Assembly (NCBI GenBank): GCA_977020255.1
Contig: CDROCS010000506.1
Location: 62,001 to 126,000, forward strand
Length of the DNA stretch: 64,000 nucleotides
Direction of reading: 5' to 3'
DNA from: Obrimoposthia wandeli
Taxonomy: Eukaryota
Shown here in pieces: positions 17,720 to 32,892 of this stretch. How positions within the stretch are numbered: the first letter of the stretch is position 1; every line of letters starts with the position of its first letter. The notes under the pieces were generated by a model, which had not been told where the DNA came from, made no database searches, and was given only the letters and a program-made list of their open reading frames with translations. Made by a program: the position numbers and the translations under genes.

Positions 17720-18469
17720 TTAAAGTACCCCAGCCTGTTGTAGTTTATCCACCAGTTCAGCGACATCAGCCACTTTAATCCCAGCTTGACGTGTTGGTGG
17801 CGGCTCTACTTTAAGCGTCGTTAATCGTGGTGATAAGCTCACCCCAATATTCTCAGGATATGTAACGGTGATGATTTTACGTTTCGCTTTCATAATATTA
17901 GGCAGCGAGGCATAACGCGGTGTATTTAGGCGTAAATCGACAGTAACAACCGCGGGTAAGCTTAAAGCTAATGTGACTAAGCCCCCATCGACTTCGCGGG
18001 TGACTTTGATTTTATTCGGCACTGTGAAAACGATATCAGAGGCAAAAGTACCTTGCGGCATGTCGGTGAGCGCCGCTAACATTTGCCCCGTTTGATTGTT
18101 GTCGGTATCAATAGCTTGTTTACCCAATAGTACTAAATCTGGCAATTGTTCTTGTACGACTTTGTGCAGTAATTTTGCCACATCAAGGGATTGAACCTCT
18201 TCGTCGACTCTGATCAGAATAGCCCGATCAGCGCCTAAGGCTAACCCTGCCCGCAATTGAACTTCCGCGTCTTTGGGGCCGATACAAACCAAGACAACTT
18301 CATCGGCCGAGCCTTGCTCTTTAAAACGCACAGCTTGTTCAATCGCGATCTCGCAGAATGGATTAATCGCCATTTTTACACTGCTCGTTTCAATGCCGCT
18401 TTCATTAGCATTCACCCTGACGTTGACCTTATGATCGACAACCCGCTTCACCGCAACTAATATCTTCAT
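17720..18469 (-). CDS. etfB: Electron transfer flavoprotein beta subunit
   Basis: MKILVAVKRVVD, NPFCEIAIEQA, GKQAIDTDNNQTGQMLA, NTPRYASLPNIMKAK. Confidence 0.94.
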   Translation of the reverse strand: MKILVAVKRVVDHKVNVRVNANESGIETSSVKMAINPFCEIAIEQAVRFKEQGSADEVVLVCIGPKDAEVQLRAGLALGADRAILIRVDEEVQSLDVAKLLHKVVQEQLPDLVLLGKQAIDTDNNQTGQMLAALTDMPQGTFASDIVFTVPNKIKVTREVDGGLVTLALSLPAVVTVDLRLNTPRYASLPNIMKAKRKIITVTYPENIGVSLSPRLTTLKVEPPPTRQAGIKVADVAELVDKLQQAGVL

Positions 18470-18686
18470 AGCATCCTCAAGACATACTTGTGTTTATTCA
18501 ATAATGTCGTTATGCATTAAGAATAGTGGTGTTATGGGGTATGGCAAATTGGAAGGATGATAATTAAACATCGTAGATTAAAGCGCAGCAAGGCTTTAAA
18601 TCATCGGTTATAATCTGTAAAGTACCAACCATATTATAACAAGTGCTTGCTTGGTATGAGCGAGTAGCAATAAAGAGTATTAAAAA

Positions 18687-18935
18687 ATGAATAACGAACA
18701 TGATGTCATTGATAATTTAGCAGAACTTGAGCGTTTCCTATTAAGTGTTGAAAACGGTGGTTTCGGTCTACAAAATGTTGAAGGTATTGGCATGGCGACA
18801 AACACCAAAGACGGTCGCCACTTTGTCGCTGTATTTGATGATAAGCAAAGTCTACTTTTAGCACGTTATGTGACTGACGAAGTTTATGAAAACGGTAAAG
18901 AAATGGTACGTAACGGTGTGCAAACTAAGCATTAA
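18687..18935 (+). CDS. Hypothetical protein (82 aa, acidic)
   Basis: Clean ORF in an intergenic gap with normal codon usage; no family recognised. Confidence 0.7.
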   Translation: MNNEHDVIDNLAELERFLLSVENGGFGLQNVEGIGMATNTKDGRHFVAVFDDKQSLLLARYVTDEVYENGKEMVRNGVQTKH

Positions 18936-19046
18936 TACTATGCCATTTAACGCATAATCCTTCACCGTATAAACAGTAACGGGATCTGAACTGGTAGTTT
19001 AGATCCTGTGATGCCCTTCCTTCAAACATGCCGATTAGCCAACCCA

Positions 19047-19934
19047 ATGAATTCACTACATCTTAAAGCACTATTACTGGCCATTGAAACCGGTTCTATT
19101 TCTGCTGCCGCACGTAAACTAGGTAAGAAACAACCTCAAGTAAGTCAATGGATCTCAGACCTTGAAATAGATCTCGGGGTGAACTTTTTTGATCGCAGTG
19201 GCAATAAATCGACATTAAGTCTCGAGGGGGAACGTTTACTGCCCTATCTCACACATACGCTTAGTCAACTAGATAGGTTTGTGCAAAGTGCCGAGATGAT
19301 TGCACAAGATGAGCCGACGGTGCTTACGATAGGTATCGAAAATTACGTGCCTGATTTAGCTTTTATCGAGCCACTCTCACTAATATTAGACTTGCCCAGT
19401 TTAAGTATTGAAGTGTATCGAGATGAGAAACAGCAGTTAACGCAGGCTTTAATCACGGGAGATGTCGATATTATCATTACCCATGAGTCTGATACCCTGC
19501 ACCACCAGCAGTTTGAATATTGTCGCTTAGGCCATTACCAAGATGTACTTGTTTGTGCGCCTGCACATCCGCTCGCCTCATTATCAATGGTGAACACGAG
19601 CGATCTGAGCCAATACCGAGAACTCATTTTAGGCGAATCAAATAACCAACTACAGAGCGATGAAAAGAATGATGGTTTTAGCCCCAGTTATGCGATGTTT
19701 TCAGATATCCAGCTACTTATTACGTTGTTGAAAAATAGCAAAGGCTTTGCATTTTTACCCGCAGATTATATCAGTAACGACATTACCAGCAAGTACCTGA
19801 CCACTTTAGCTTGTGACTTTGAACCAGCAGCTATTATCCGTCGTATCGAATTATGCTGGCACAATGGCTTAACCTTATCAACGCAAGGTAATCAAGTTAT
19901 CTCTGCCTTTAAAGACAATCACCAGCTTGCATAA
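19047..19934 (+). CDS. LysR family transcriptional regulator
   Basis: HTH LKALLLAIETGSISAAARKLGKKQPQVSQWISDLEIDLG; ATG at 19047 preferred over the ORF-track start 19008. Confidence 0.9.
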   Translation: MNSLHLKALLLAIETGSISAAARKLGKKQPQVSQWISDLEIDLGVNFFDRSGNKSTLSLEGERLLPYLTHTLSQLDRFVQSAEMIAQDEPTVLTIGIENYVPDLAFIEPLSLILDLPSLSIEVYRDEKQQLTQALITGDVDIIITHESDTLHHQQFEYCRLGHYQDVLVCAPAHPLASLSMVNTSDLSQYRELILGESNNQLQSDEKNDGFSPSYAMFSDIQLLITLLKNSKGFAFLPADYISNDITSKYLTTLACDFEPAAIIRRIELCWHNGLTLSTQGNQVISAFKDNHQLA

Positions 19935-19978
19935 GGCTTTGAATATTTAACCTTTTAAGTATGAGACTATGACATCCT

Positions 19979-21040
19979 TTAGACCTTTATTTCTTGCTGT
20001 GTTGCACAGTGGATAGTACCACCACCTGCAGCTATCCCATCAATAGCGATTTGTTCTATTATTCTATCAGGAAAAGCCTCTTCTAAAATTTTTCTCGTAC
20101 GTGCGTCTGCTTTTTTATCACCAAATTTTTGTGCCACAATAGCATTGTTACAGGCGTAATAACCAATATAGCCTGCTGCAAAGTCGCGGGTGCCAAATTT
20201 CTTGTTAATTTTTTCAGGTGTATCGAGGACAATTATCTTTAATTTATTGCCAGCGGAATCCTCGCTGTTTTTTAATACTTCAATATTTTTTCGAGTTACC
20301 TCATAGTCAAATGAATAACGATCATTATCCCTACTTACGATTACTTCCCCAGGTTTTGTAAATCGAGCATAAAAGTCAGTATGACCATCGGTGATATCCT
20401 TACCTTTAATTCCCTCCAGCCAGATGATCTTTTTTAGTCCAAGTAATTCTTTTAACTCTGATTCAATCTCCTCTTGGCTCATCCCTGGATTACGATTACC
20501 GTTAATAATACAGCTCTTAGTCATAATGGCAGTGCCTGCGCCATCTACTTCAAAACACCCTCCCTCTAGAGTTAATTTTGATGTTTTAATAATAGAGTTT
20601 GTATAGCTGCTTATGAAATCTGCAACGTGAGCATCTAAGCTATGCTTTTGCTCTCCCCCCCAGCCGTTAAAATTAAAGTTAATTCCATATTTTTTGCCAC
20701 CAGAGTCTTTGACAAAGATCGGTCCTGTATCTCTGAGCCATAAATCGTCAGTCTCACACTCAATGAGATCAATTGGGTAGTTATTAGTCTCAGACTGATC
20801 CAATAGTGAAATCGCTTCATTATAATCATTCGATGATACGAGCATCGATACGGGTTCATATTTCGCAATAGTGTTAGCGATCAAAACTAAATTCTTTTTA
20901 ACTTCAGCAATTTGTCTTTTTGACCATATATGATCATTTGCGACAAAGGACATCCAAGTTCGCTCATGAACGTCATTTTCTTCTGGCATTGTCATTAACA
21001 TCGATAAAGAGCTATCTTTTGAAAATATATTTTTACTCAC
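19979..21040 (-). CDS. Agmatine deiminase / peptidyl-arginine deiminase (PAD_porph) family enzyme
   Basis: DLWLRDTGP, LEGG, DITDGHTDFYARF, GGGTIHCATQQ (catalytic Cys). Likely GTG start at 21040 after AGGAG; no signal peptide. Confidence 0.88.
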   Translation of the reverse strand: MSKNIFSKDSSLSMLMTMPEENDVHERTWMSFVANDHIWSKRQIAEVKKNLVLIANTIAKYEPVSMLVSSNDYNEAISLLDQSETNNYPIDLIECETDDLWLRDTGPIFVKDSGGKKYGINFNFNGWGGEQKHSLDAHVADFISSYTNSIIKTSKLTLEGGCFEVDGAGTAIMTKSCIINGNRNPGMSQEEIESELKELLGLKKIIWLEGIKGKDITDGHTDFYARFTKPGEVIVSRDNDRYSFDYEVTRKNIEVLKNSEDSAGNKLKIIVLDTPEKINKKFGTRDFAAGYIGYYACNNAIVAQKFGDKKADARTRKILEEAFPDRIIEQIAIDGIAAGGGTIHCATQQEIKV

Positions 21041-21155
21041 ACAAAAACTCCTGAATAAATTGGTACCAATAAATATTATTACTATTTTATTAGATTGTGC
21101 ACAGTTAAAGTAATGGTGATTATTGGCCGCTAACCACCTTACGTTGATACGATTA

Positions 21156-22841
21156 TTATTCCGAATCAAATACGATATCACCTTGCAATACTGTCATCAA
21201 AATCTCAGTTTTAGCGATGGCGTTTTTAGAAATACGGGTAATGTCTTTGTCTAAAATAGCGAAGTCAGCCGATTTACCTACCGTAATAGAACCGGTAATA
21301 TCGCTGATACCTAAGCTGTCAGCTGCATTAATGGTATATGCATCTATCGCCGCATACACATCAGGCAAACCTGTTTCACCCATCTTCAAACTATTGGCAA
21401 TGCCCACTAATGGATTAATGTCATTTACATTCCAATCACTACTTAGCGTTACATTGGCACCAGTATCGAAAATCGACTTCAAGTTCATTAATGAATGAGT
21501 ACGTTCTTTACCTAAAAAAGCTTCAGCCCACTGATGGTCATGCTGCGCAACATAATCAGAACCAACTTGGAAATCGGCAGTCACATCTAACTTAGCAAAA
21601 CGCGCCACGTCTTGGGGATTGACCATTTCAACATGCGTTAGCGTATAAGGTTTTTCAGAACCTTGGCTGCGCGCATACTCAACCGCATTTAATGATTCGC
21701 GAACAGCGCTATCACCAATAGCATGGATATGAGCGCTGTAACCTATTTTATCCAACGAACTTAACCATGTTTTCATCTGTTTTGGGGCAATATAGTTAAT
21801 GCCATTGGGTTCGTCGGGTATGTATGTCTCTAAATAAGGTGCGAGTGTTTTTGCAGTACCATTAATAATGATGCCGTCACTGTACATCTTGACTTGATCA
21901 ATGAGTAACAAGGATGATTTATCACTTGATTGTATGGTCTTTAAAAATGCCAATTGCGGTGGCATTGAATCAGTCGGGTAAATCCATGGACGTAGGGAAA
22001 TGCGCGAGGTTAAATCCCCTTTTCTCTCAGCTTCTTTCCATACTTCATACCAACCGCGTTTCCAATAAAGTCGCCCATCGCCAATAGTGGTAATACCGTG
22101 TGCAGCCGCTTCTTCAAGACCAACCATCAACCCGTCATAGCTTTGGTCAAATTGATTCTCTAAACTGTTCCACGCCATCTCCATCATAATGTCACCAGCG
22201 TTATCAAACACAATACCGTTAAGTTCACCCGTTATTTTGTCTTTCAGGATCTTACCGCCTTGCGGCTCTGCTGAATCCTTGGTTATGTTAGCTAACTTTA
22301 ACGCGACAGAGTTGACCCACATAGAATGTGACGTTTGCTCCATCAGCACAACGGGTTGGTCGGGGAAAATACGGTCAATAACTTCAAGCGGTGTATAACG
22401 ATTATCATCCGTTAAAATCGCATCTAACGAAAAACCATAACCCATGACCCAAGCTCCTGGCTTCGCATTTTCACGACAGGTTTTTAAGTAAGATATTTGC
22501 TCTTCAAGGGATGCGTCCATATCCAGTTCGCAATTACCGCCCGCTTCCGATGCGGCTTCAAACACATGATTATGATTATCGATAAACCCAGGCATCACAT
22601 ATGCTTGTTCGAGATCGATTATTTCAGTGCCTTTCGCGCGATATGCTGCAGATGCGTTACCCTTACCGATAAAGACAATATTGCCATCACGTATTGCAAT
22701 GGTATTCGCATTATCGTGACCGTATATGTTGGCGTTGGTTAAAATCATATCGGCTTTTGTACCAAGTTCTGGTTGCGCCGCCAAAATGGTAGGACTCATC
22801 ATTAAACTCACAGCTATTGCTAGAGGGGTAATTTTATTCAT
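21156..22841 (-). CDS. Secreted metal-dependent amidohydrolase (amidohydrolase_3 / YtcJ-like)
   Basis: Sec-type signal MNKITPLAIAVSLMMSPTILAA; PGFIDNHNH, HIHAIGD, THVE and SSDW metal ligands. Confidence 0.88.
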   Translation of the reverse strand: MNKITPLAIAVSLMMSPTILAAQPELGTKADMILTNANIYGHDNANTIAIRDGNIVFIGKGNASAAYRAKGTEIIDLEQAYVMPGFIDNHNHVFEAASEAGGNCELDMDASLEEQISYLKTCRENAKPGAWVMGYGFSLDAILTDDNRYTPLEVIDRIFPDQPVVLMEQTSHSMWVNSVALKLANITKDSAEPQGGKILKDKITGELNGIVFDNAGDIMMEMAWNSLENQFDQSYDGLMVGLEEAAAHGITTIGDGRLYWKRGWYEVWKEAERKGDLTSRISLRPWIYPTDSMPPQLAFLKTIQSSDKSSLLLIDQVKMYSDGIIINGTAKTLAPYLETYIPDEPNGINYIAPKQMKTWLSSLDKIGYSAHIHAIGDSAVRESLNAVEYARSQGSEKPYTLTHVEMVNPQDVARFAKLDVTADFQVGSDYVAQHDHQWAEAFLGKERTHSLMNLKSIFDTGANVTLSSDWNVNDINPLVGIANSLKMGETGLPDVYAAIDAYTINAADSLGISDITGSITVGKSADFAILDKDITRISKNAIAKTEILMTVLQGDIVFDSE

Positions 22842-22881
22842 CGTTCATTCCTTTGTGTCCTACAATCATCATAATTATAGG

Positions 22882-22944
22882 AAGTGTGTGTCGATGAGGT
22901 AAGTCTACTGCAGCGAATAAAGGAAAGAAAAGTAGTGAGTATAA
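22882..22944 (-). promoter_or_regulatory. Conserved upstream motif, copy 1 (amidohydrolase operon)
   Basis: Ungapped 48/63 identity with 29629-29691; contains TTATACTCACT (-10-like TATACT) and TGCAGTAGACTTACCTCATC on the minus strand. Confidence 0.7.
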
Positions 22945-22974
22945 GGATTTTGGGATAGTGATTAGCCTCGATAA

Positions 22975-23577
22975 TTAATCATCAAGCAATTGCGCCACTC
23001 GCTGTTGTAAATGCGGGATCACCTCTTGTTCAAACCAAGGATTTTTCTTCAACCAAATATTGTTACGTGGGCTTGGATGTGGCAAAGGTAATAGCTCTGG
23101 CCAATCGCCTTGACAAAAGTCTTGCCAATGCCTCACTGTTTCGGTCAGGTTTTTCTGTTTTACCTCACCCATGTGCCATTTTTGCGCATAAATACCAATC
23201 ACCAGTATCAAATCAATATTGGGCATTGCAGCGAGTATGTCTGCTCGCCATGTTTTAGCACATTCAGATCGTGGCGGCAGGTCACCTGACTTACCGGTTC
23301 CTGGATAACAGAATCCCATTGGTAAAATGGCGATTTTACTGGCATCATAAAAAGTGTCGTTATCAATATCCATCCATTGGCGTAAACGATCGCCACTAGG
23401 GTCGGTAAATGGTATACCTGATTCATGCACGCGAATACCTGGAGCCTGCCCTGCAATCAATATTTTGGCTTGCGTATCGACTTGCAACACAGGCCTTGCC
23501 CCCAGTGGCAGATCTGGTTCGCACAAGGTGCACTTTCGTACATCGGAAACGATTGTATCGAGAATATTATTTTTCAT
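22975..23577 (-). CDS. Uracil-DNA glycosylase superfamily protein
   Basis: CTLC start, GQAPGIRVH...PFTDPSGDRLRQW, MGFCYPG, LPHPSPRN motifs. Confidence 0.88.
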   Translation of the reverse strand: MKNNILDTIVSDVRKCTLCEPDLPLGARPVLQVDTQAKILIAGQAPGIRVHESGIPFTDPSGDRLRQWMDIDNDTFYDASKIAILPMGFCYPGTGKSGDLPPRSECAKTWRADILAAMPNIDLILVIGIYAQKWHMGEVKQKNLTETVRHWQDFCQGDWPELLPLPHPSPRNNIWLKKNPWFEQEVIPHLQQRVAQLLDD

Positions 23578-23693
23578 ACTGTCATCCCAGAACGGTTTCT
23601 ACTTTATACCGAAAAATAGGCTTTATATTTCACTACTCAAATTCATCTGAAGTATAACGAGTATATTGATTGTTCGTCTGTTTATATAGGCTC

Positions 23694-23737
23694 TTTTTAA
23701 CCAACTATTATTTGCCTCTAATGTGAGGCGCTATGCC
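23694..23737 (+). repeat. attC-like remnant (right half) upstream of ydeI
   Basis: AACCAACTATTATTTGCCTCTAATGTGAGGCGCTATGCC; its arm is complementary to 24372-24390 and it ends one base from GTTATGC. Confidence 0.45.
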
Positions 23738-24329
23738 AAAAGGATCTAATTTGATGCCTGAACCTGACCCATTGAAAATAATGACATTTGTAACACCGAA
23801 AGATCTCGGCCAGTGGCTCAAAGTGAATAACGCCTCTGAAAGTGAACTATGGGTGAAGATATACAAGAAAAATACGGGGATTCAGAGCGTGACTTGGAAT
23901 GACGTCGTGATCGAGGCGTTATGTTGGGGTTGGATCGACGGTATTAAAAAGTCAATCGATGACCAAGCTTATCTTCAGCGCATTACGCCCAGAAAAACGC
24001 GAAGCAACTGGTCTAAAAGGAACACTGAGCATGCGGAACGTTTGATAAGTGAGAGCCGGATGATGGAATCAGGGCTCGTGCATATTCGAGCAGCAAAAGC
24101 GGACGGTCGTTGGGAAAATGCCTATGTGGTCAGTGAAATGGAAGTGCCCGCGGATTTCCTAACTGCACTGGAGAGCAAGCCGAATGTTAAAGCCTTTTTT
24201 GAAACGCTCAATAAATCGAGTCGTTATGTTATCGCGTACGGATTGATAAGTGCGAAGAAACCCGAAACCAGACTAAGGCGGTTTACAAAATTCATGGACA
24301 TGCTTGTTCACGAAGAAAAGCCTAAATAA
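23733..24329 (+). CDS. YdeI/OmpD-associated family protein
   Basis: ELWVKIYKK...VTWNDVVIEALCWGWIDG...RITPRKTRSNWSKRN...KKPETRLRR. Real start is possibly the ATG at 23754. Confidence 0.88.
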   Translation: MPKGSNLMPEPDPLKIMTFVTPKDLGQWLKVNNASESELWVKIYKKNTGIQSVTWNDVVIEALCWGWIDGIKKSIDDQAYLQRITPRKTRSNWSKRNTEHAERLISESRMMESGLVHIRAAKADGRWENAYVVSEMEVPADFLTALESKPNVKAFFETLNKSSRYVIAYGLISAKKPETRLRRFTKFMDMLVHEEKPK

Positions 24330-24350
24330 GTAGAATTCGACATATAAATA

Positions 24351-24442
24351 AGAATAAGTGTTGAACAAGCGGGACAAATTACAGTTGGCTTTTACCCTTT
24401 CCTCGCTTGTTTTAGCTCATCATTATTGCCTCTAACTGAGGT
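24351..24442 (+). repeat. Degenerate attC-like site downstream of ydeI
   Basis: CAAGCGGGACAAATTACAGTTGGCTTTT...TTTTAGCTCATCATTATTGCCTCTAACTGAGG; shares TTGCCTCTAA..TGAGG with the upstream remnant. Confidence 0.45.
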
Positions 24443-24473
24443 ATCTCGCTTTAATTAGAAATAAACGGACACC

Positions 24474-24806
24474 ATGTTTGAATTAAAAACTATCGCACTA
24501 TTTTTCATCACTGCCATTGCTGAAATCATTGGCTGTTATTTACCTTATCTTTGGCTTAAGCAAGATAAGAGTATATTGCTGCTGATCCCTGCTGCAGCAA
24601 GCCTTGCGCTATTTGCATGGTTGTTGTCACTGCACCCAGAAGCAGCAGGTCGTGTGTATGCGGCGTATGGTGGTGTCTACATTTTCGTTGCCATACTATG
24701 GCTTTGGGGTGTTGATGGTATTAAACCGACGATGTGGGATATGATTGGCGCTTCAGTAGCCCTTGTTGGTATGGCCATTATTATGTTCGCACCAAGAGCC
24801 GCGTAA
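24474..24806 (+). CDS. ynfA: YnfA/UPF0060 small multidrug resistance-like membrane protein
   Basis: [14 protein letters not shown] and [14 protein letters not shown] motifs, 110 aa, 4 TM. The 3' end overlaps the convergent GATase gene by 26 nt. Confidence 0.88.
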
Positions 24807-25512
24807 CCATAGTCTGCCTTAAAAACACCAATATCCACTTGGCGATAAGCTTATCATCTGCTTGCTGTCCAAGTGAGTCCATCGCAGATTTGATCGTATC
24901 TGCAGGGATAATATCGCGACGTTGTTCCATCAACGCTGCTGAATATTGCGAGGTAAACTCAGGATGTCCCTGCAGACCAAGAAAATGCGAATCCACCTGG
25001 AACATGCTATAACGACAGAAATCATTACTCAGCAATACTTGAGCACCAGCAGGTAATTTACAGACTTGATCTTGATGGCAAACCACCAGCGCAATGTTAT
25101 CTTGCTTCGGCAGCATCCAACTGTGATCGACAAGCACATCAGCATGTGCAATACCGACGCCCCAACCGCAGGTACTTTTCTCCACTTGTCCGCCCAACGC
25201 TTTAGCAATCATTTGATGACCAAAACAAATACCGACTAAGCCCTTCTGTGCCTCATAGAGTTGACGCGTGAAATCTTCCAACTGGCGGATCCAAAGGTAA
25301 TCATCATTAACACTCCATTTACTGCCACTGCAAATGTAAGCATCACACTCGTCAATATGCTCTGGAAACGTCCCATCAATCACCCGATAAAAATGAAGTT
25401 CTAATACGCTATCCACTTGCTGGAATAACGCCTCAAACATAGCGGCGTAATTACCAAAATCAGCGTGTAAACTAGCCCTTACATCGTCACATTGCAGAAT
25501 ACCGAGTTTCAT
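24781..25512 (-). CDS. Class I glutamine amidotransferase-like hydrolase (putative gamma-glutamyl-amide hydrolase)
   Basis: GICFGHQ nucleophile Cys and QGHPE His-Glu triad; last gene of the GS-like operon. Confidence 0.85.
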
Positions 25513-25546
25513 AGCCTTGCCTCCACCTTATAGTTAGTCCTGCCGT

Positions 25547-26716
25547 TTACAAATCGCCATGTACCGCAGATAAGAAAATATCAGCATATTGCTGCGCATT
25601 AAGCATTATCGGATTACCGCCTGCTGATGGGTCTTGCTCTGCCATGATACCGATCGCAACGACACGGTCAGCATCAATGCCAATTTCACCGAGAGAATGT
25701 GGTATATCGAGTTGTTTACGCAATGTCAGTACCCATTCTAGAAAACCATCAAAGTCAGCATCTTCTAAAGTTAAATAACGACTTAAACGAGTAAGTTTAG
25801 CTTCAATGGCACTACGATTGGCCTTTAAAACATACGGCATTAAGATAGCGTTTAATAAACCATGGTGACTATCGAACAGCGCACCAATAGGGTGAGCGAG
25901 TGCATGCATACCACCAAGACCACGCTGGAAAGCAGTTGAGCCCATAGTTGACGCAGTCATCATTTGGGCTCTTGCTTCCAGGTCGCAACCGTCTTCAACT
26001 GCGCGCGGTAAATATTCTTTAATCAACCGGATCGCTTCGAGGGCAATGCCTTCCGCCATCGGATGATAACCAGTAGCACAATACGCTTCTAAAGCATGGG
26101 ACAATGCATCTAACCCTGTAGCTGCGGTTAATTGCGCTGGTAATCCGACACTCAATTGTGGGTCTAAAATGACAATGGCAGGCAACATCTTAGGATGAAA
26201 AATAATGCGTTTAATGTGATTGTTACTGTCCGTAATCACCGACGCGCGCCCTACTTCTGAACCTGTGCCAGACGTGGTAGGCACTGCGACAACAGGTACC
26301 ATTCCTCCAACATTTACCTTTAACCAGTTATCATCGACATCGTCGAAATCCCAAATAGGCCGATCTTGCCCGACCATCAAGGCAACGGCTTTACCGGCAT
26401 CCAATGCTGAACCACCACCAAATGCGATAACACCATCATGTCCGCCGCCCTTAAATGCACGCACTCCATCACTGATGTTATCTCCTGTTGGATTACCTTT
26501 AATCTGTGAGAAGATACGGCACTTTAAACCCGCATTTTGGCAATTGATTAACGCGGTTTGCACCATCGGCAAGTCAGCGAGGCCGGGATCGGTAATGAGT
26601 AGCGGTGATGTCATGCCCAGTTCTTGGCAAGTAGCGGGGAGTTCTTCAATACGACCGATACCAGCACGTATAGCAGTAGGATAATGCCAATTCGCCGTGA
26701 ATTGATTGAGTTCCAT
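25547..26716 (-). CDS. Iron-containing alcohol dehydrogenase
   Basis: GGGSALD, PTTSGTGSE, DALSHALEA, HALAH and HHGLLN metal ligands. Confidence 0.92.
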   Translation of the reverse strand: MELNQFTANWHYPTAIRAGIGRIEELPATCQELGMTSPLLITDPGLADLPMVQTALINCQNAGLKCRIFSQIKGNPTGDNISDGVRAFKGGGHDGVIAFGGGSALDAGKAVALMVGQDRPIWDFDDVDDNWLKVNVGGMVPVVAVPTTSGTGSEVGRASVITDSNNHIKRIIFHPKMLPAIVILDPQLSVGLPAQLTAATGLDALSHALEAYCATGYHPMAEGIALEAIRLIKEYLPRAVEDGCDLEARAQMMTASTMGSTAFQRGLGGMHALAHPIGALFDSHHGLLNAILMPYVLKANRSAIEAKLTRLSRYLTLEDADFDGFLEWVLTLRKQLDIPHSLGEIGIDADRVVAIGIMAEQDPSAGGNPIMLNAQQYADIFLSAVHGDL

Positions 26717-26757
26717 AGAGCCTCCATTTTTGTTTACTACAACGGTTATAACGACAG

Positions 26758-28164
26758 CTACAATTTAATATGAAATGATTTCGGACGTGTGAGCGACTCA
26801 TAACCTAATTTAGATAAGGTGCAGCCTCGCCCCGAGTTCTTCACTCCCGTCCACGCCAATTCAGGATCGAGGTAATCACAACGATTAACAAAAAAAGTAC
26901 CGGTTTCCAGTTGCTCGCCAATAGCGATAGCCTTGTCGATATCTTCAGTGAATACCGATGCAGTAAGCCCGAACTCAGAATCATTCATTAACGCGATGGC
27001 TTGTTCATCACTTTCGACTTTCATGATGCCAATGACAGGGCCAAAACTTTCTTCGGTCATCACCCGCATTTGGTGGTTAACATTGGTTAACAGCTGCGGT
27101 GCCAGATAAGGCGAACCAACTTCATTCATTGCAAAATCATCGGCATTAATATGCGCAATAGCACCTTGAGATATAGCATCATGAACTTGCGAACGCACAA
27201 AGTCAGCCGCTGACGTTTTGACCATCGGCCCTAATGTGGTGTTCCTATCATCAGGTCGCCCCAGTTTATAGGCTTTAACAAGATCAACAGACTTACGCAC
27301 AAATTCGTCGAATACGCAGCTATCTACATAGATACGTTCAATACCACAGCAAGATTGTCCTGAATTGAAAAATGCCCCATCGATACAGGTGGCCACGGCA
27401 TGATCAAGTTCTGCATCACCGCGGACATAAGCAGGATCTTTACCGCCGAGTTCTAATCCAACACCAATGAAACGCCCGCAACTGGCATTTTCAACCATAG
27501 CGCCACCCGCCACTGACCCAGTAAAAGCCACGTAATCAATTCGAGTATCCTTAATAACGGCTTCTGTATTGGCATGACTAAGATGTAAATATTGAAATAC
27601 CCCATCCGGTAAACCTGCTTTTTCAAAGGCTTTATATAATTGCTCAGCACATAATGGTGTCTGTGCGGAGTGCTTTAATATCACACTGTTGCCCGCCATA
27701 ATGGCAGGCATGACGGCATTAATCGACGTCAGGTAAGGATAATTCCACGGCGCGATAACAAAAGCGGTCCCCAATGCTTCACGTTTAATATAGCGCTGGA
27801 AACCGGTTTTATCTGGTAATTGAATATTTGCTAAGGCGTCATCGGCAGCGTCAATCATGTAACGCGCACGCTCAGCTAACCCTGCGACTTCACCACTTGC
27901 ATATTGGATCGGACGCCCCATCATCCAGCATAATTCATCTGCTATCTCAGTTTCATTGGTAATGAAAGCATCGACCATTTTATGGCAAATAACAGCGCGC
28001 TCTTTCAGCGCAAGCTTACGCCAATGCGTTTGCGCGGCGACAGCTTTATGCAAGGTAGCATGAATGTCGTCAAGACTCGCAAGTTCACGCTCAACGTAAA
28101 CAGCATTATCAATGGGTGAACGTGTTTGTTGTATAAGCCTTCGCTTTTTACTTATCATTGTCAT
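26758..28164 (-). CDS. NAD(P)-dependent aldehyde dehydrogenase
   Basis: APWNYP, FTGS, LELGGKDP, GQSC (catalytic Cys), EESFGP. Confidence 0.93.
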   Translation of the reverse strand: MTMISKKRRLIQQTRSPIDNAVYVERELASLDDIHATLHKAVAAQTHWRKLALKERAVICHKMVDAFITNETEIADELCWMMGRPIQYASGEVAGLAERARYMIDAADDALANIQLPDKTGFQRYIKREALGTAFVIAPWNYPYLTSINAVMPAIMAGNSVILKHSAQTPLCAEQLYKAFEKAGLPDGVFQYLHLSHANTEAVIKDTRIDYVAFTGSVAGGAMVENASCGRFIGVGLELGGKDPAYVRGDAELDHAVATCIDGAFFNSGQSCCGIERIYVDSCVFDEFVRKSVDLVKAYKLGRPDDRNTTLGPMVKTSAADFVRSQVHDAISQGAIAHINADDFAMNEVGSPYLAPQLLTNVNHQMRVMTEESFGPVIGIMKVESDEQAIALMNDSEFGLTASVFTEDIDKAIAIGEQLETGTFFVNRCDYLDPELAWTGVKNSGRGCTLSKLGYESLTRPKSFHIKL

Positions 28165-28178
28165 TATCGCAGTGCTCC

Positions 28179-29549
28179 CTAAATAATTTCAAAATAACGT
28201 TCGAGTTCCCAATCCGTCACGTGTTTTCTAAATTCACGTTCTTCCCACTCGCGAGTCGCAGCATAATGCGCAACAAATTCTTGGCCGAACAACTCTTTCG
28301 CCGCTTCAGAACGTTTGAGTTTACGCGCGGCATCAAACAATGTGCGTGGTAGAGATAACGCTTCAGCATGGTCTTGATCGTAGGCATTACCTTTCACTTG
28401 TGCATGAGGCTCTAACTTCTGCTCGATCCCCATTAAACCAGATGCTAATGCCGCTGCGAGCGCAAGATAAGGATTAGCATCGGCAGAGCCCAAACGATAT
28501 TCAATACGCTGAGATTTTGCCGAACCAGGGATCACCCGCAGTGCAGTGGTGCGATTTTCGACGCCCCAAGTTGCATCAAGCGGCGCCCATAACCCCGGCA
28601 CCATACGACTATAACTGTTTACGGTCGGCGCGATCATAGCCAAGAATTCTGGCATGTATTTTTGCTGCCCGGCAAGGAAGTGACGTTGAGTATCACTCAT
28701 GTTGTATTCATTATTAGGTTCGTGAAACAATGCTTTACCACTTTTGTCTTTTAACGAAATATGGATGTGACCACTTTGGCCCGGCCAATCACTTGACCAT
28801 TTCGCCATGAAGGTTGCCATCAGATTATTACGCTGCGCCCAGACTTTAATGAAAGTTTTGAATAGTGCGGCTTTATCTGCGGCATCTTGCGCGCCATCAT
28901 AAGCAATGGCCGCTTCTAATACACCTGGACCGGTTTCGGTGTGTAGACTCTCTAATGGAAAGTCCATAACTTCACCTAGAACCATGATTTGATGATGTAA
29001 ATCGGCATGGACTGAATTGCGAATAATAGAGTAGCCAAAACTATCAGGGGTGAGCGGCGTTAAATTCTTGTAACCTTTTTCTCTTATCGATTCAGGTGTT
29101 TCTTTAAACATAAAAAATTCATATTCAAATGCAGCGGTAACATCCAAGCCCATACGCTCGGCACGTGCTAATACTCGGCGTAACGTACCACGAGGACAAA
29201 TCGCTTCGGCTTGATCGCGAAACTCAGCAATGAATAACAACATATCGCCTTCAGCAGGTAGATTACGGCAAGTATCAGGTAAAATACGCACCGGGGCATC
29301 GGGATAGCCAGTATGCCAACCAGTGTATTCAACATTATCGTAAAGCTGATCTTTTGAATCCCAGCCTAAAACCACATCACAAAACGAAAAACCACTGTCG
29401 AGAGAACAGAAGAATTTATCTTTACTCATATACTTACCGCGCATAATACCGTCGGCATCAAACAAACCAACTTTGATATGGCTTAAACCGCGTTGTTCGA
29501 TAATATGCTTGGCATCGGCAACGGTTTTCACTTCTCTGGGATTGAGCAT
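28179..29549 (-). CDS. Glutamine synthetase-like gamma-glutamyl-amine ligase
   Basis: EYEFF, HTETGPGVLE, GQSGHIH, ENRTTALR, RIEYR; 456 aa GS-like subfamily rather than canonical GlnA. Confidence 0.9.
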   Translation of the reverse strand: MLNPREVKTVADAKHIIEQRGLSHIKVGLFDADGIMRGKYMSKDKFFCSLDSGFSFCDVVLGWDSKDQLYDNVEYTGWHTGYPDAPVRILPDTCRNLPAEGDMLLFIAEFRDQAEAICPRGTLRRVLARAERMGLDVTAAFEYEFFMFKETPESIREKGYKNLTPLTPDSFGYSIIRNSVHADLHHQIMVLGEVMDFPLESLHTETGPGVLEAAIAYDGAQDAADKAALFKTFIKVWAQRNNLMATFMAKWSSDWPGQSGHIHISLKDKSGKALFHEPNNEYNMSDTQRHFLAGQQKYMPEFLAMIAPTVNSYSRMVPGLWAPLDATWGVENRTTALRVIPGSAKSQRIEYRLGSADANPYLALAAALASGLMGIEQKLEPHAQVKGNAYDQDHAEALSLPRTLFDAARKLKRSEAAKELFGQEFVAHYAATREWEEREFRKHVTDWELERYFEII

Positions 29550-29628
29550 AATACATCCTTATATTACAGAGCCTATTGCGGCTATGCTTGATAATGAGTG
29601 ATAGCATCATTCTTAGTATAGGGAGTGT

Positions 29629-29691
29629 AAGTGTGTTGTGATGAAGAAAGTCGACTGCAACGATAAAATAAAACCAAAAAAGTGAGTATAA
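29629..29691 (-). promoter_or_regulatory. Conserved upstream motif, copy 2 (GS-like operon)
   Basis: Ungapped 48/63 identity with 22882-22944, same orientation relative to the downstream minus-strand operon. Confidence 0.7.
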
Positions 29692-29766
29692 TCAGCTCAG
29701 AATAGGCTGAAATAGAACTTTCACCTTGCAGCGAATATCGACCAGCCGACTCAACAAGGACATGAG

Positions 29767-30279
29767 ATGACGAATATCAACATTCAATACTTTAAGCACC
29801 CTTACGCTGAATTTGTACTTGGCTCATACCAAGGCAAACTGTGTTTGTGTGATTTTCGCTACAGGAAAATGCGCGAGTCTGTTGATAACCGTATTCAGCG
29901 CGGCCTTAATGCCAGGTTTGTCGAACAAAATGATGCGGTATTAGAACAAACCAAAGCGCAGTTAAACGCCTATTTTATGGGGGAACGTAGTGTGTTTGAC
30001 TTGCCTTTATTACTGCTCGGCACCGATTTTCAACAAACGGTATGGCGAGCACTACAGGAAGTAAAGTATGGTGAAACAGCGACATATTTAGATCTAGCGA
30101 CAACCATAGGTAACGAAAATGCAGTGAGAGCGGTAGGCAATGCCAACGGTGCGAATGGATTAGCCATTATCATTCCTTGTCACCGTATTATTGGTAGCCA
30201 AGGCGAGCTGGTCGGTTACGGCGGTGGTTTGTCATTAAAGAAGCGTTTGTTAGAACTTGAGCAGAATTTATTTATCTAA
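29767..30279 (+). CDS. ogt: Methylated-DNA--protein-cysteine methyltransferase
   Basis: GTDFQQTVWRAL, RAVGNANGAN and PCHRI active-site motif. Confidence 0.92.
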   Translation: MTNINIQYFKHPYAEFVLGSYQGKLCLCDFRYRKMRESVDNRIQRGLNARFVEQNDAVLEQTKAQLNAYFMGERSVFDLPLLLLGTDFQQTVWRALQEVKYGETATYLDLATTIGNENAVRAVGNANGANGLAIIIPCHRIIGSQGELVGYGGGLSLKKRLLELEQNLFI

Positions 30280-30336
30280 TACATTATCTAAATAAATCGC
30301 ATTCAATAAATTTTAGTTAAGTACCAAAAAAAAGGC

Positions 30337-30368
30337 AAAAAAAATGGCAAACCCATAAGGCTTACCAT
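30337..30368 (-). terminator. Intrinsic terminator of the cold-shock gene
   Basis: Minus strand ATGGTAAGCC-TTAT-GGGTTTGCCAT followed by a T run. Confidence 0.7.
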
Positions 30369-30414
30369 TCTTTATATCTATTCAGCTCTGAATCAGAGCC
30401 GAATACATAGCAAA

Positions 30415-30621
30415 CTAGATTGCTACGATGTTTTCAGCGTTAGGACCTTTTTGACCTTCGCCTACTGTGAATTCTACTTTTTGGCCTTCAGTCAAAGTTT
30501 TGAAACCTTCACTTGAGATAGCGCTGAAATGTGCGAATACATCTGGGCCATTTTCTTGCTCGATGAAACCAAAACCTTTAGCTTCGTTGAACCATTTAAC
30601 TGTACCTTGAACTTTAGACAT
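30415..30621 (-). CDS. Cold-shock protein (CspA family)
   Basis: RNP1 KGFGFI and RNP2 VFAHF, 68 aa; long AT-rich upstream leader (30622-30790). Confidence 0.97.
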
Positions 30622-31019
30622 AATAATACCTGTAATTTTAATTTAATTTGCCTTAATAGGCTTGGATAGCGTACAAAAAACTGGAACTTAAAAACTACAA
30701 TGCGAGGTATTAATATAACAACGAAATGGAGAATGTAAACAAAAGGCTTTCTTGCTGAGGGACACTCTATAGAATCTAAAAAAAAAGTCAAAGCTATTCA
30801 AAAAATAAAATACCTAAAATTGTAATAAAAACATAATTAAAAACAAAGTTACACATAACTTTCAAAGGCTTAATCTGTTTTTTCACCCATATATTATTTT
30901 ATATTTATTTATCACTACTGACGAGGAAACATCCAGTCATGTCTAAATGTCAAGCTTGCTTTACCACAACGGCGCGGTTATTCTGATCTTATAGATAGAT
31001 AACAGATTAAAATATCAAT

Positions 31020-31946
31020 ATGAAAGCACAATATACATTACCAATAATCCTTGATGGTGGCATGGGCCGTGAACTTCAGAGCATTGGCGCGCCTTTTCAA
31101 CAACCAGAATGGTCAGCTCAAGCATTAATTGAAGCCCCTCACTTTGTTTCTCAAGTACATACTAGCTTTATAAAGGCCGGTGCCGAGATTATTACCACCA
31201 ATACCTACGCGTTAGTGCCCTTTCATATTGGCCAGAAACGCTTTGACGAACAAGGCGCAGACCTCATCAAACTTAGCTGGAGTTGAAGCGAGTATCCATA
31301 CACTGCCGGATCACTCAGTTATTAGGCCGCTGCCGTATCCCCCAGTATTAGGTTCTTACCGACCCGACCTGTTTAAAGTAGAAGCAGCTGCAAGCTCCCA
31401 TGCTCAGCTATCAAACAAATCAACAAACAGGATGTCATTGGCCTTGCCGAAACATACCTGAACCATCTCTAAGAAGCGGCCATGATCAAATCCCGCACCG
31501 CGACCACAGACAAACCGACCTGGATTGCATTTACCATTAAAGATGAAATAACCACAGAGCCTGCTCTGCGTTCTGGTGAGTTGGTTTATGATGCGGTGAG
31601 TCAAATAGCAGGACAACATGTGTCGGCTATCTTATTTAATTGCAGTTGCGCCGAAGTCATGGAAGCAGCGCTGACGACGGCCAAACAAGCGTTATCCGAT
31701 CTCGGTATTGCTGACCAAGTACAGTTAGGCGTATACGCCAATAACTTCCCGCCCATTGGCGACCTGCACGAAGCAAATAATGCCGTAAAAGGCATAAGAA
31801 AGGATGTTGCACCGCAAAGATACCGCGAATTTGCGACAACTTGGGTCAACGCCGGCGCATCAATTGTCGGTGGTTGTTGTGGCGTCTCGCCGGCACACAT
31901 TAAAGCATTAGCCGAGCTTAAACATTTACCGTCATCACTTAGCTAA
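31020..31946 (+). pseudogene. Homocysteine S-methyltransferase family gene, frameshifted
   Basis: Three fragments in different frames: LDGGMGRELQ..ITTNTYA (31020-31286), PPVLGSYRPDLF (31228-31461), ILFNCS..GGCCG (31482-31946). Confidence 0.85.
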
Positions 31947-31985
31947 TCGGTAATCGGTAATCGGTAATCGGTAATCGGTAATCGC
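31944..31985 (+). repeat. Tandem heptamer (TAATCGG)x5 plus one imperfect copy
   Basis: Read directly; the first TAA is the stop codon of the methyltransferase gene. Confidence 0.95.
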
Positions 31986-31989
31986 AATA

Positions 31990-32892
31990 TTAATGCGTGC
32001 TGCCTTTAGGCGTCATATTAAAATGGCGCTTAAATTCACGACTAAACTGCGATGAACTGGTATACCCCCACTTGAGTCTCTCGCGGCATCACCACTCTTA
32101 AAGCCCCCTCGGTATTGATCAGCTCTTGGCTTGGCTTTAGCGCACTTTCTTTAAATACTGCAGCGGTGATTCTAATGTCACTTTACGAAATGCTAAATGG
32201 AATGCAGAGACACTCATGTTAGCTTCATCTGCCAGATGTTGAACCGTGAGTCCTTCTGAATAACCTTGGTAAGTATTTGCAGACTCTCGCCACTGGCGTA
32301 TTGCCCGTCGTCAGATGTGGGCTAAATCAACAATACATGCCCTCTCTTCAGACCCAAATCAGTGCCCGGATAAACTGATTTCATGACCGCCCATAATTGA
32401 CTCACCCAAATATTTAGTCTCTAAGTCAGAATGCAGTGCCATCATCAAGCGCTTGCAACTCTCTAGCATTGGCGTCGCCATTTTGACCGAGCTTAATCCA
32501 CAGGTTTCTTGGTTACTTCTCGATGCATAATCAAAAGAGGCCGCTTCCAATTCATTCACTAAGCGGTGTAACAAGGTTGGATCGACATTAATGGTTAAGC
32601 CTAACAAGGGCACACCATGCTCGGGGAAAGCTTCGCACTCCAATGGCATTGGCACACCAACGACCAAATAGTCTTCAGGCCCATAATGCACTGGCTGATT
32701 GCCTATGTGTATATGCTTGCGCCCCTGCCCCATAACGATAATTCCCGATTGGTATACAAAAGGCTGGCGCTTATTGCCTTTGCTACTGCGATAAAACCAC
32801 ACCCCTGGAATAGCGGTTTCTTTAATGCCTTCCAGATCGTTAAGATCGTACGCATCCGCATATGTTTGCATTAAATCGCCAAGAGAATTCAT
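31990..32892 (-). pseudogene. yqhC: AraC family regulator, YqhC-like, frameshifted
   Basis: AraC_N ORF 32359-32892; HTH remnants [32 protein letters not shown] and SQFSREFKRHFNMTP in other frames; divergent from the yqhD-like gene. Confidence 0.8.

What the first reader, a model, noticed from the sequence alone, without database searches (positions are those of the whole stretch)
22876..29691. Shared 63-nt non-coding motif upstream of two separate amine-catabolic operons: candidate new regulon or cis-regulatory element
Seen: 22882-22944 and 29629-29691 align without gaps at 48/63 identity, and a CCTATA element follows in both after a 6-nt gap. On the minus strand both read TTATACTCACT - T-rich - TTTAT(T)CGYTGCAGTMGACTTWCYTCATC - ACACACTT. 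Copy 1 lies 41-103 nt upstream of the amidohydrolase/agmatine-deiminase operon and copy 2 lies 80-142 nt upstream of the GS-ALDH-FeADH-GATase operon, in the same orientation. The flanking genes are unrelated, so this is not a gene duplication. Inference: TATACT is the -10, so most of the conserved block is a 5' leader or downstream operator (palindrome AGTnnACT), and the two operons form one co-regulated pathway. It matches no riboswitch or TF box I recognise.
Basis: partly seen in the sequence, partly recalled or inferred. Interest (0 to 1): 0.72.

Follow-up and report, generated by a model that had tools for sequence, protein, structure and literature searches.

The report
Duplicated promoter-operator region in Moritella
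Two unrelated amine-breakdown operons of a Moritella bacterium carry diverged copies of one ~110-base promoter-and-operator region, most likely because the control region of an amidohydrolase gene was copied in front of the other operon; this is a tidy but ordinary case of regulatory rewiring.

Summary
The two blocks match 48/63 without gaps, and the similarity runs over about 110 nt (z = 17.5 against shuffles).

It is not an RNA element: Rfam gives nothing and RNAalifold predicts 0 pairs. It is not a dispersed repeat either. In 13 Moritella genomes a model of it hits strongly only upstream of the amidohydrolase (AH) gene and the GS-like operon.

The AH copy is the original:
- It is found upstream of AH orthologues in other genera.
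- There it starts with an inverted repeat, CTATC-N10-GATAG.
- A LysR-family gene lies next to AH.

In Moritella the right half of that repeat reads TTATAC. The better core promoter is the proximal ATCACA-16-TATACT.

The GS copy is specific to Moritella and has been truncated or lost in most species. Where it survives it is far better conserved than fourfold sites (0.02-0.14 against 0.40-0.60).

Best reading: a duplicated LysR-type operator plus promoter that can put both operons under one regulator. Binding, transcription start and inducer are all untested.

The scan holds one other first-reader note on this same stretch and none on other DNA.

The parts
22866..22958 (-). Copy 1 of the element, the regulatory region of the amidohydrolase (AH) gene: dyad-like box, T-rich tract, 16-nt core and proximal -10-like box
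   Evidence: Alignments A1-A3. Model R1 hits the orthologous place in 6 Moritella genomes and in 2 genomes of other genera.
22939..22958 (-). Dyad-like box CTATCC-N8-TTATAC.
   Evidence: The only exact match in the window to CTATC-N10-KATAS. It occupies the position of CTATC-N10-GATAG upstream of AH orthologues in four other genera.
22917..22933 (-). 17-nt T-rich tract
   Evidence: Its T-richness is kept in all copies and in the other genera.
22901..22916 (-). 16-nt core TCGCTGCAGTAGACTT. It contains the -10-like TAGACT, 31 nt after the dyad.
   Evidence: The core is identical in 6 of 13 Moritella genomes, at either the AH or the GS copy.
22865..22894 (-). Proximal promoter-like region. The scan calls TCGACA-18-GATGAT. 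A perfect TATAAT lies at 22879-22874.
29607..29705 (-). Copy 2 of the element, upstream of the GS-like/ALDH/Fe-ADH/GATase operon
   Evidence: Alignments A1-A3. R1 hits the orthologous place in G175, G142 and G081, and partly in G004.
29686..29705 (-). Dyad-like box of copy 2, CTATTC-N8-TTATAC
   Evidence: One mismatch to the dyad pattern. Same register as copy 1.
29648..29663 (-). 16-nt core of copy 2, TCGTTGCAGTCGACTT. TAGACT is changed to TCGACT.
   Evidence: The change is shared only with G175.
29615..29642 (-). Sigma-70-like promoter ATCACA-16-TATACT, the best candidate core promoter of the GS operon
   Evidence: Promoter scan. This part is kept upstream of the GS gene in species that lost everything further upstream.
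21156..22841 (-). AH: Amidohydro_3 protein, 561 aa. This is the gene the element originally belongs to.
   Evidence: Pfam PF07969, 2.6e-93. Orthologues in other genera carry the element or its dyad.
19979..21181 (-). PAD_porph (agmatine-deiminase-like) gene, overlapping the end of AH
   Evidence: Pfam. Found only in the window and in G175. Absent from C410 and from all other Moritella loci examined.
19008..19934 (+). LysR-family regulator, convergent with the AH operon. Candidate binder of the dyad.
   Evidence: Pfam HTH_1 and LysR_substrate. Co-occurrence with AH and adjacency to it.
24781..29549 (-). GS-like, ALDH, Fe-ADH and class-I GATase operon (gamma-glutamylation type)
   Evidence: Pfam and NCBIfam. 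The gene order is kept in 11 Moritella genomes.

Best explanation
The two blocks are paralogous copies of one DNA-level control region of about 110 nt. It consists of an operator, a T-rich spacer and a promoter.

The original belongs to the amidohydrolase gene. There it is conserved across several genera, beside a LysR-family regulator gene. It begins with an inverted repeat, CTATC-N10-GATAG, which in Moritella has become CTATCC-N8-TTATAC.

In an ancestor of Moritella the whole region, from the dyad to just past the proximal -10, was copied in front of the GS-like gamma-glutamylation operon.

Inferred mechanism: the LysR protein binds the dyad. Through the T-rich tract and the core it activates a weak promoter when an amide- or amine-derived inducer is present. 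The promoter is either the proximal (C)CTATAMT box about 60-75 nt downstream of the dyad, or TAGACT at 31 nt. In strains that keep both full copies (this one and G175), the amide-splitting and amine-glutamylating steps would then be switched on together.

Shown: homology of the copies, copy number, distribution, conservation, and the lack of RNA structure. Inferred: the binder, the direction of control, the transcription start and the inducer.
For: Similarity:
- It is far above chance.

Not RNA:
- There are no Rfam matches above chance in 18000-32000 even at E up to 10, apart from the unrelated cspA element.
- RNAalifold predicts 0 pairs on 14 copies.

Copy number:
- Model R1 gives hits at E <= 3e-11 only upstream of AH and GS in 13 Moritella genomes; the next best hit, at E 9e-4, is the degenerate GS copy of G159.
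- The 16-nt core occurs elsewhere only at control level.
- The metagenome scan found four more AH-linked copies and no new context.

The AH copy is older:
- R1 finds it upstream of AH in the non-Moritella genomes G053 (8e-10) and G027 (4e-8).
- G377, G270, G125 and G161 have ATC-N10-GAT at the same place, followed by the same CTA..TTTT run.
- 80 GS loci outside Moritella have no element, no AH and no LysR nearby, and the dyad occurs there only at chance level.

LysR link:
- AH and LysR co-occur in the same 6 of 13 genomes.
- LysR is adjacent to AH in G027, G377, G270 and G125.
- In G059 LysR is broken, and the AH element has decayed: core divergence 0.18-0.27 against 0.02-0.14 in the others.

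Selection:
- Fourfold-site divergence is 0.40-0.60 between most species pairs (0.16-0.34 for the three closest), against 0.02-0.14 for positions 14-57 of the element.

Promoter:
- ATCACA-16-TATACT is called by the scan.
- Species that lost the upstream half keep it.
- TATACT or TATAAT lies 59-76 nt after the dyad in Moritella, G377, G270 and G053.
Against: - There are no binding, transcription-start or expression data. No RNA run holds this DNA.
- G142 and G081 keep a full, well-conserved GS copy but have no AH and no LysR orthologue. Either something other than this LysR constrains it, or the loss is recent.
- The dyad spacing is ATC-N10-GAT, not the textbook T-N11-A.
- The dyad lies about 84 nt (or about 52 nt) upstream of the predicted start, not about 65 nt.
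- The LysR gene is convergent with AH, not divergent as is usual.
- In Moritella the dyad is degenerate: only TAT...ATA is symmetric.
- No similar dyad was seen upstream of the LysR gene itself.
- In the window's GS copy TAGACT has become TCGACT, which would cripple that candidate -10.
- The link between the broken LysR and the decayed element in G059 is a single case.
Confidence: 0.6

Rival explanations
1. One reading: the distal TATACT is the -10, transcription starts a few bases downstream, and the conserved block is a 5' leader or a downstream operator bound at the AGTnnACT palindrome.
For: TTATACTCACT is invariant in 10 of the 12 copies aligned in A3 (G059 reads TGATACTCACT, G081 TTCTACTCACT). 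TATACT is a 5/6 match to the -10 consensus. A partly similar GATTATACCCACTTTTTT lies in a promoter-like position at one other orthologous place in at least 9 of the 13 Moritella genomes.
Against: - No -35 and no TGn motif lie upstream. The promoter scan does not call it.
- The sequence upstream of it is not conserved and is replaced in different genomes.
- In G377, G270, G125 and G161 the same position reads GATAG, not a -10, as the right arm of a palindrome.
- GS operons of six species lack it altogether or carry it mutated.
- AGTAGACT is not a palindrome in most copies.
Confidence: 0.15
2. A neutral relic: a piece of intergenic DNA carried along when the ogt gene moved between the AH and GS neighbourhoods, with no function at the GS operon.
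For: ogt lies divergently next to the element on the GS side in the window and G175. It lies on the AH side in G123, G035 and one metagenome contig (L186); in two others (L185, L187) about 2.4 kb separates ogt from the AH element. The upstream half has been lost repeatedly in front of GS.
Against: G142 and G081 have the full GS copy without ogt beside it. GS copies differ by 0.07-0.09 in the core where fourfold sites differ by 0.44-0.50. Type-specific differences are shared across species, so the copy is old and has been retained.
Confidence: 0.12
3. A cis-acting RNA: a riboswitch, an attenuator, or an unstructured pyrimidine-rich leader bound by a protein or a small RNA.
For: It lies upstream of catabolic operons and has the same orientation in both. 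In four other genera the dyad could form a 6-bp hairpin whose sixth pair varies in step (C-G, A-T, T-A).
Against: There are no Rfam matches. There is no consensus structure, 0 pairs. The hairpin potential is lost in Moritella, where only 3 pairs remain. The block lies upstream of the best-supported promoter.
Confidence: 0.05
4. A small mobile repeat (REP, MITE or Correia-like) that happens to sit at two places.
For: Two copies sit in one genome next to unrelated genes.
Against: There are at most two copies per genome in 13 genomes, always at the same two loci. There are no terminal inverted repeats. Copies group by locus across species, not within a genome.
Confidence: 0.02

Closest known systems
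LysR-type (LTTR) regulated promoters with an upstream dyad recognition site and a promoter-proximal activation site, such as the BenM/CatM, CbnR and OccR systems (from general knowledge, not tested here)
   Same: A LysR-family gene is linked to the target gene across genera. An inverted repeat lies upstream of a promoter with a weak -35. An AT-rich tract lies between the dyad and the promoter. The targets are catabolic genes, which are probably induced by a small molecule.
   Different: The regulator gene is convergent, not divergent. The dyad is ATC-N10-GAT rather than T-N11-A. By prediction it lies about 84 or 52 nt upstream of the start, not about 65. In Moritella the dyad is degenerate. 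Binding has not been shown.
Putative mobile promoters / promoter reuse (Matus-Garcia, Nijveen and van Passel 2012; commentary PMC3575422)
   Same: Similar non-coding sequence of 50 nt or more lies upstream of non-paralogous genes in one genome. It is not tied to a known mobile element. It has been proposed as a route to regulatory rewiring.
   Different: Their criterion is at least 80% identity over at least 50 nt. These copies reach only 38/50. This is an old duplication, predating the Moritella radiation, that has been kept by selection. Here the donor locus and the likely regulator can be named.
Gamma-glutamylation amine catabolism operons (E. coli puu, Pseudomonas pau and ipu) with their own repressors (from general knowledge)
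   Same: The GS-like ligase, aldehyde dehydrogenase and class-I amidotransferase-type hydrolase gene set.
   Different: An Fe-alcohol dehydrogenase takes the place of the amine oxidase, which suggests an amino-alcohol substrate. No PuuR/PauR-type regulator gene is adjacent. NCBIfam scores are below the cut-offs for PuuA and PuuC.
REP, MITE and Correia-type intergenic repeats
   Same: A short non-coding sequence found more than once in a genome.
   Different: There are two copies at most, at fixed loci. There are no inverted termini and no dispersal.

Membership tests
LTTR-regulated promoter | A LysR-family regulator gene genetically linked to the target | tested here: met
   LysR is adjacent to AH in all 6 Moritella genomes that have AH, in C410, and in four other genera. 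The orientation is convergent, not the usual divergent one.
LTTR-regulated promoter | Dyad recognition site of T-N11-A type centred near -65 | tested here: inconclusive
   A conserved dyad exists (CTATC-N10-GATAG). Its spacing is one base longer than the classic form. Its predicted centre is about -84 (proximal -10) or about -52 (TAGACT). It is degenerate in Moritella.
LTTR-regulated promoter | Binding by the regulator and a response to an inducer | not testable with these tools
   This needs EMSA or footprinting and expression assays.
Putative mobile promoter (PMP) | At least 80% identity over at least 50 nt upstream of non-paralogous genes in one genome | tested here: not met
   The best 50-nt window is 38/50 = 76%. 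The genes are non-paralogous. It works like a reused promoter but fails the operational cut-off.
Riboswitch or other Rfam cis-regulatory RNA | Match to a covariance model, or a conserved secondary structure with covariation | tested here: not met
   No match at either region at E up to 10. RNAalifold predicts 0 pairs on 14 copies.
REP/MITE-type repeat | Many dispersed copies, with terminal inverted repeats or a palindromic unit | tested here: not met
   One or two copies per genome in 13 genomes. No inverted termini.
Sigma-54 promoter | GG at -24 and GC at -12 with fixed spacing | tested here: not met
   No TGGCAC-N5-TTGC-like site with GG and GC in either intergenic region at up to 3 mismatches.
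Sigma-70 promoter (proximal) | -35 and -10 hexamers 16-18 nt apart | tested here: met
   ATCACA-16-TATACT at 29642-29615 and TCGACA-18-GATGAT at 22894-22865. These are consensus matches only, and the count in each region is no higher than in shuffles.

The most novel reading that the evidence does not exclude
A complete LysR-type operator-promoter cassette was copied, without any recognisable mobile element, from an amidohydrolase gene to a gamma-glutamylation operon in the Moritella ancestor. It was then independently truncated, internally deleted or replaced in at least five lineages. If so, the genus is a natural experiment in how an operon is recruited into a regulon and later released from it. 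The same reading links an exported amide hydrolase to amino-alcohol or amine glutamylation as one inducible pathway.
Probability: 0.4. Interest if true: 0.45.

Novelty: new member of a known kind. Interest (0 to 1): 0.3.

Why it matters
Regulons are usually thought to grow by point mutations that create short operator sites. Here the whole control region, from operator to -10, seems to have been copied, and related species show several stages of its later decay.

That gives a concrete, testable pair of promoters for studying rewiring. It also gives a handle on two uncharacterised catabolic modules of a deep-sea or cold-water genus: an exported Amidohydro_3 enzyme, and a GS-like/ALDH/Fe-ADH/GATase pathway. 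The LysR protein and its inducer would point to the substrate.

It is not a new class of element.

Tried and rejected
Tests that excluded a reading:
- Rfam at E up to 10 over 18000-32000 found only the unrelated cspA thermoregulator.
- RNAalifold on 14 copies gave no structure.
- A genome-wide search in the 1.35-Gb mixed assembly found only copy 1, copy 2 and the orthologue of copy 1 in a second Moritella contig, C410. Pattern hits on low-GC contigs were chance: control counts were about half the hits, and 0-1 mismatch hits were confined to the Moritella contigs apart from one on a 26% GC contig. For those other contigs I computed GC content only.
- Regulon search: the 16-nt core at up to 2 mismatches in 13 genomes stays at control level outside the two loci.
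- The dyad pattern alone in the window gives 11 hits against 10.8 expected.
- No sigma-54 site and no terminal inverted repeats.
- The idea that the copy arrived with ogt is rejected, because G142 and G081 have the copy without ogt.

By eye only, with no tool test: no CRP, NtrC, Nac, IHF, NarL or PuuR-like site, and no conserved upstream small ORF.

Steps that could not be run:
- RNA evidence: no RNA run holds the stretch. The only run that does holds it as Logan contigs of unrecorded type, probably the source sample.
Moritella loci were reached through the genome search instead.
I redid it from references.
Full report
**Where the window comes from**

The window is part of contig C506 (over 3.5 Mb) of a 1.35-Gb mixed assembly with 6912 contigs. 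The GS-like protein is 91-98% identical to proteins of named Moritella species, so the contig is a Moritella chromosome. A second, related Moritella contig, C410, is in the same assembly.

Twenty other loci fetched by a pattern search lie on other contigs, many of low GC. For those I computed GC content only.

**The observation**

On the minus strand, 22882-22944 and 29629-29691 match 48/63 without gaps.

- The similarity starts about 14 nt further upstream, at a CTATYC motif. From there it is 56/80 in register.
- With one 6-nt indel it runs through CCTATAAT / CCTATACT.
- The local alignment score is 35, against 9.6 +/- 1.45 in dinucleotide shuffles (z = 17.5). Nothing else in the window resembles it.
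- Copy 1 precedes an Amidohydro_3 gene (AH, 21156-22841) and a PAD_porph gene.
- Copy 2 precedes a GS-like ligase, an aldehyde dehydrogenase, an Fe-alcohol dehydrogenase and a class-I amidotransferase.

**Not RNA, not a repeat**

- Rfam gives no match at either place even at E up to 10.
- RNAalifold on 14 copies predicts no base pair at all.
- I built a sequence-only model, R1, from a gap-free 79-column alignment of 12 copies. It was searched against all 13 species-level genomes of the genus.
- All hits at E <= 3e-11 lie upstream of AH or of the GS gene. There are one or two per genome.
- The next best hits have E above 1e-4. The best of them (E 9e-4, G159) is the degenerate GS copy; most of the rest are partial matches to the TATAC/T-run part at one other orthologous place.
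- Outside the two loci, the 16-nt core TCGCTGCAGTAGACTT at up to 2 mismatches occurs no more often than its reversed control.
- An exact-pattern scan of the metagenome contigs gave five hits. Four are upstream of AH in Moritella-like contigs and one is chance.

**Distribution within Moritella**

I fetched 18 kb around the GS gene from 11 genomes.

- AH is present in 6 of 13 genomes, and in C410. It always carries the full element and always has the LysR gene just downstream.
- The GS operon is in all 11 fetched genomes, but its upstream region varies.
- Full element: the window, G175, G142 and G081.
- Lacking the dyad: G004.
- Degenerate: G159.
- Internal deletion that removes the T-run and the core: C410 and G190.
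- Replaced upstream of TTCATCACAAC: G204 and G035.
- Replaced upstream of CCTATACT: G103 and G059.
- Gone altogether, with an amino-acid permease gene directly upstream: G123.
- What almost all of them keep is the proximal part. The promoter scan calls it as ATCACA-16-TATACT (29642-29615).

**The AH copy is the original**

- Eighty GS loci from other genera (67-79% protein identity) have no match to R1, no AH and no LysR within 10 kb. The dyad occurs there only at chance level.
- By contrast, AH orthologues in a sample of 400 genomes of the order carry related upstream regions.
- R1 finds the element in G053 (E 8e-10) and G027 (E 4e-8).
- G377, G270, G125 and G161 have an inverted repeat, CTATC-N10-GATAG, at the corresponding place. 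It is followed by the same CTA(A/C)(C)TTTT run.
- The LysR orthologue is adjacent to AH in G027, G377, G270 and G125.
- In Moritella, G027 and G053 the right arm reads TTATAC.
- The sixth position of the arms changes in step across genera (C/G, A/T, T/A). This fits either co-evolution of an operator with its dimeric regulator, or a hairpin. I cannot separate the two readings.

**Selection**

- Fourfold-degenerate sites of the GS gene differ by 0.40-0.60 between most species pairs; the three closest pairs differ by 0.16-0.34.
- Positions 14-57 of the element differ by only 0.02-0.14 within each type.
- Differences between the AH type and the GS type are shared across species. The duplication therefore predates the radiation of the genus, and both copies have been kept by selection where they are still full length.
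- The one AH copy that has decayed (0.18-0.27) is in G059, where the LysR gene is split and carries a stop. This is suggestive, but it is a single case.

**Where is the promoter?**

There are three -10-like boxes.

- The distal TATACT has no -35, lies in the operator arm, and is absent in other genera.
- TAGACT lies 31 nt after the dyad. That is the same offset as TAAAAT in G125 and GATAAT in G161. In the window's GS copy, however, it has become TCGACT.
- The proximal TATAAT/TATACT lies 59-76 nt after the dyad in Moritella, G377, G270 and G053. It has a C just upstream of the hexamer (CTATACT), and it survives every truncation.
- I favour the proximal box as the core promoter, with TAGACT as a possible regulator-dependent one.
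- No RNA run holds this DNA, so the start sites remain open.

**Interpretation**

The element is a DNA-level control region made of an operator dyad, a T-rich tract, a core and a promoter. It belongs to AH and most likely to its neighbouring LysR-family regulator. In the Moritella ancestor it was copied in front of the GS operon. In this strain both operons could therefore answer to one regulator, which fits a pathway in which an exported amide hydrolase frees an amine that is then glutamylated and oxidised.

There are caveats:
- G142 and G081 keep a conserved GS copy without AH or the LysR.
- The geometry of the dyad is not the textbook LTTR one.
- The LysR gene is convergent with AH.
- The PAD_porph gene is a recent insertion, found only in the window and G175. 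The 'amidohydrolase/agmatine-deiminase operon' is therefore young.

**Relation to known things**

Reuse of promoter regions upstream of unrelated genes has been catalogued as 'putative mobile promoters' (PMC3575422). This pair works like one but is older and more diverged: 38/50 against their cut-off of 40/50. It is a new member of known kinds, namely an LTTR-type promoter and a case of promoter reuse. It is not a new class.

**Tool notes**

Noticed in passing
window 30376-30773 (-): Rfam cspA thermoregulator (RF01766), 78.4 bits and full length, upstream of a cold-shock protein gene. In C410, G190, G159 and G059 the cspA terminator lies directly upstream of the GS region. In the window ogt sits between them.
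   Followed up: partly
window 29767-30279 (+); L123 4432-4941; L124 5212-5721; L122 3777-4286: The ogt (O6-methylguanine methyltransferase) gene changes place between Moritella genomes. It is divergent from the GS operon here and in G175. It is divergent from AH in G123 and G035. Elsewhere it is convergent with the UDG-family gene, and in G204 it is interrupted. Wherever ogt adjoins the element, a second GCTGCA...AGACTTACCTCA-like stretch lies between them (window about 29724-29736).
   Followed up: partly
L124 about 5135-5190: A hexanucleotide (AAGAGC) tandem expansion lies between ogt and the AH element in G035. G123 has a single unit at that place.
   Followed up: no
window 19979-21181 (-): The PAD_porph (agmatine-deiminase-like) gene has an N-terminal extension of about 60 aa and scores below the NCBIfam agmatine deiminase cut-offs. 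It is found only in the window and G175, inserted between AH and LysR and overlapping AH by 26 nt.
   Followed up: partly
L148 1501-1528 and orthologous places in at least 8 other Moritella genomes: A conserved AAAATGATTATACCCACTTTTTT lies next to a 243-aa gene. It is followed by about 1.5 kb with no ORF of 60 aa or more and no Rfam family at gathering score. This is an unexplained conserved non-coding stretch.
   Followed up: partly
L121, L122 and L126, about 130-150 nt upstream of ogt: A Fur-box-like AATGATAATCATTATC lies in the region between ogt and a divergent gene, in the genomes where ogt is not next to the element.
   Followed up: no
L139 (G217:C225:17763-17794): A remnant of the AH element lies directly after the UDG-family gene in a genome without AH. 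The element is cut between the dyad region and ACTTACCTCATC, apparently by a deletion at a short GACT repeat.
   Followed up: no
L127 12787-13652 (G059): The LysR orthologue is split into two frames and carries a TGA, while AH remains intact.
   Followed up: partly
window 24474-24806 (+): The YnfA-family small membrane protein gene is 93-99% identical across the genus, much more conserved than its neighbours. It overlaps the 3' end of the GATase gene on the other strand.
   Followed up: no
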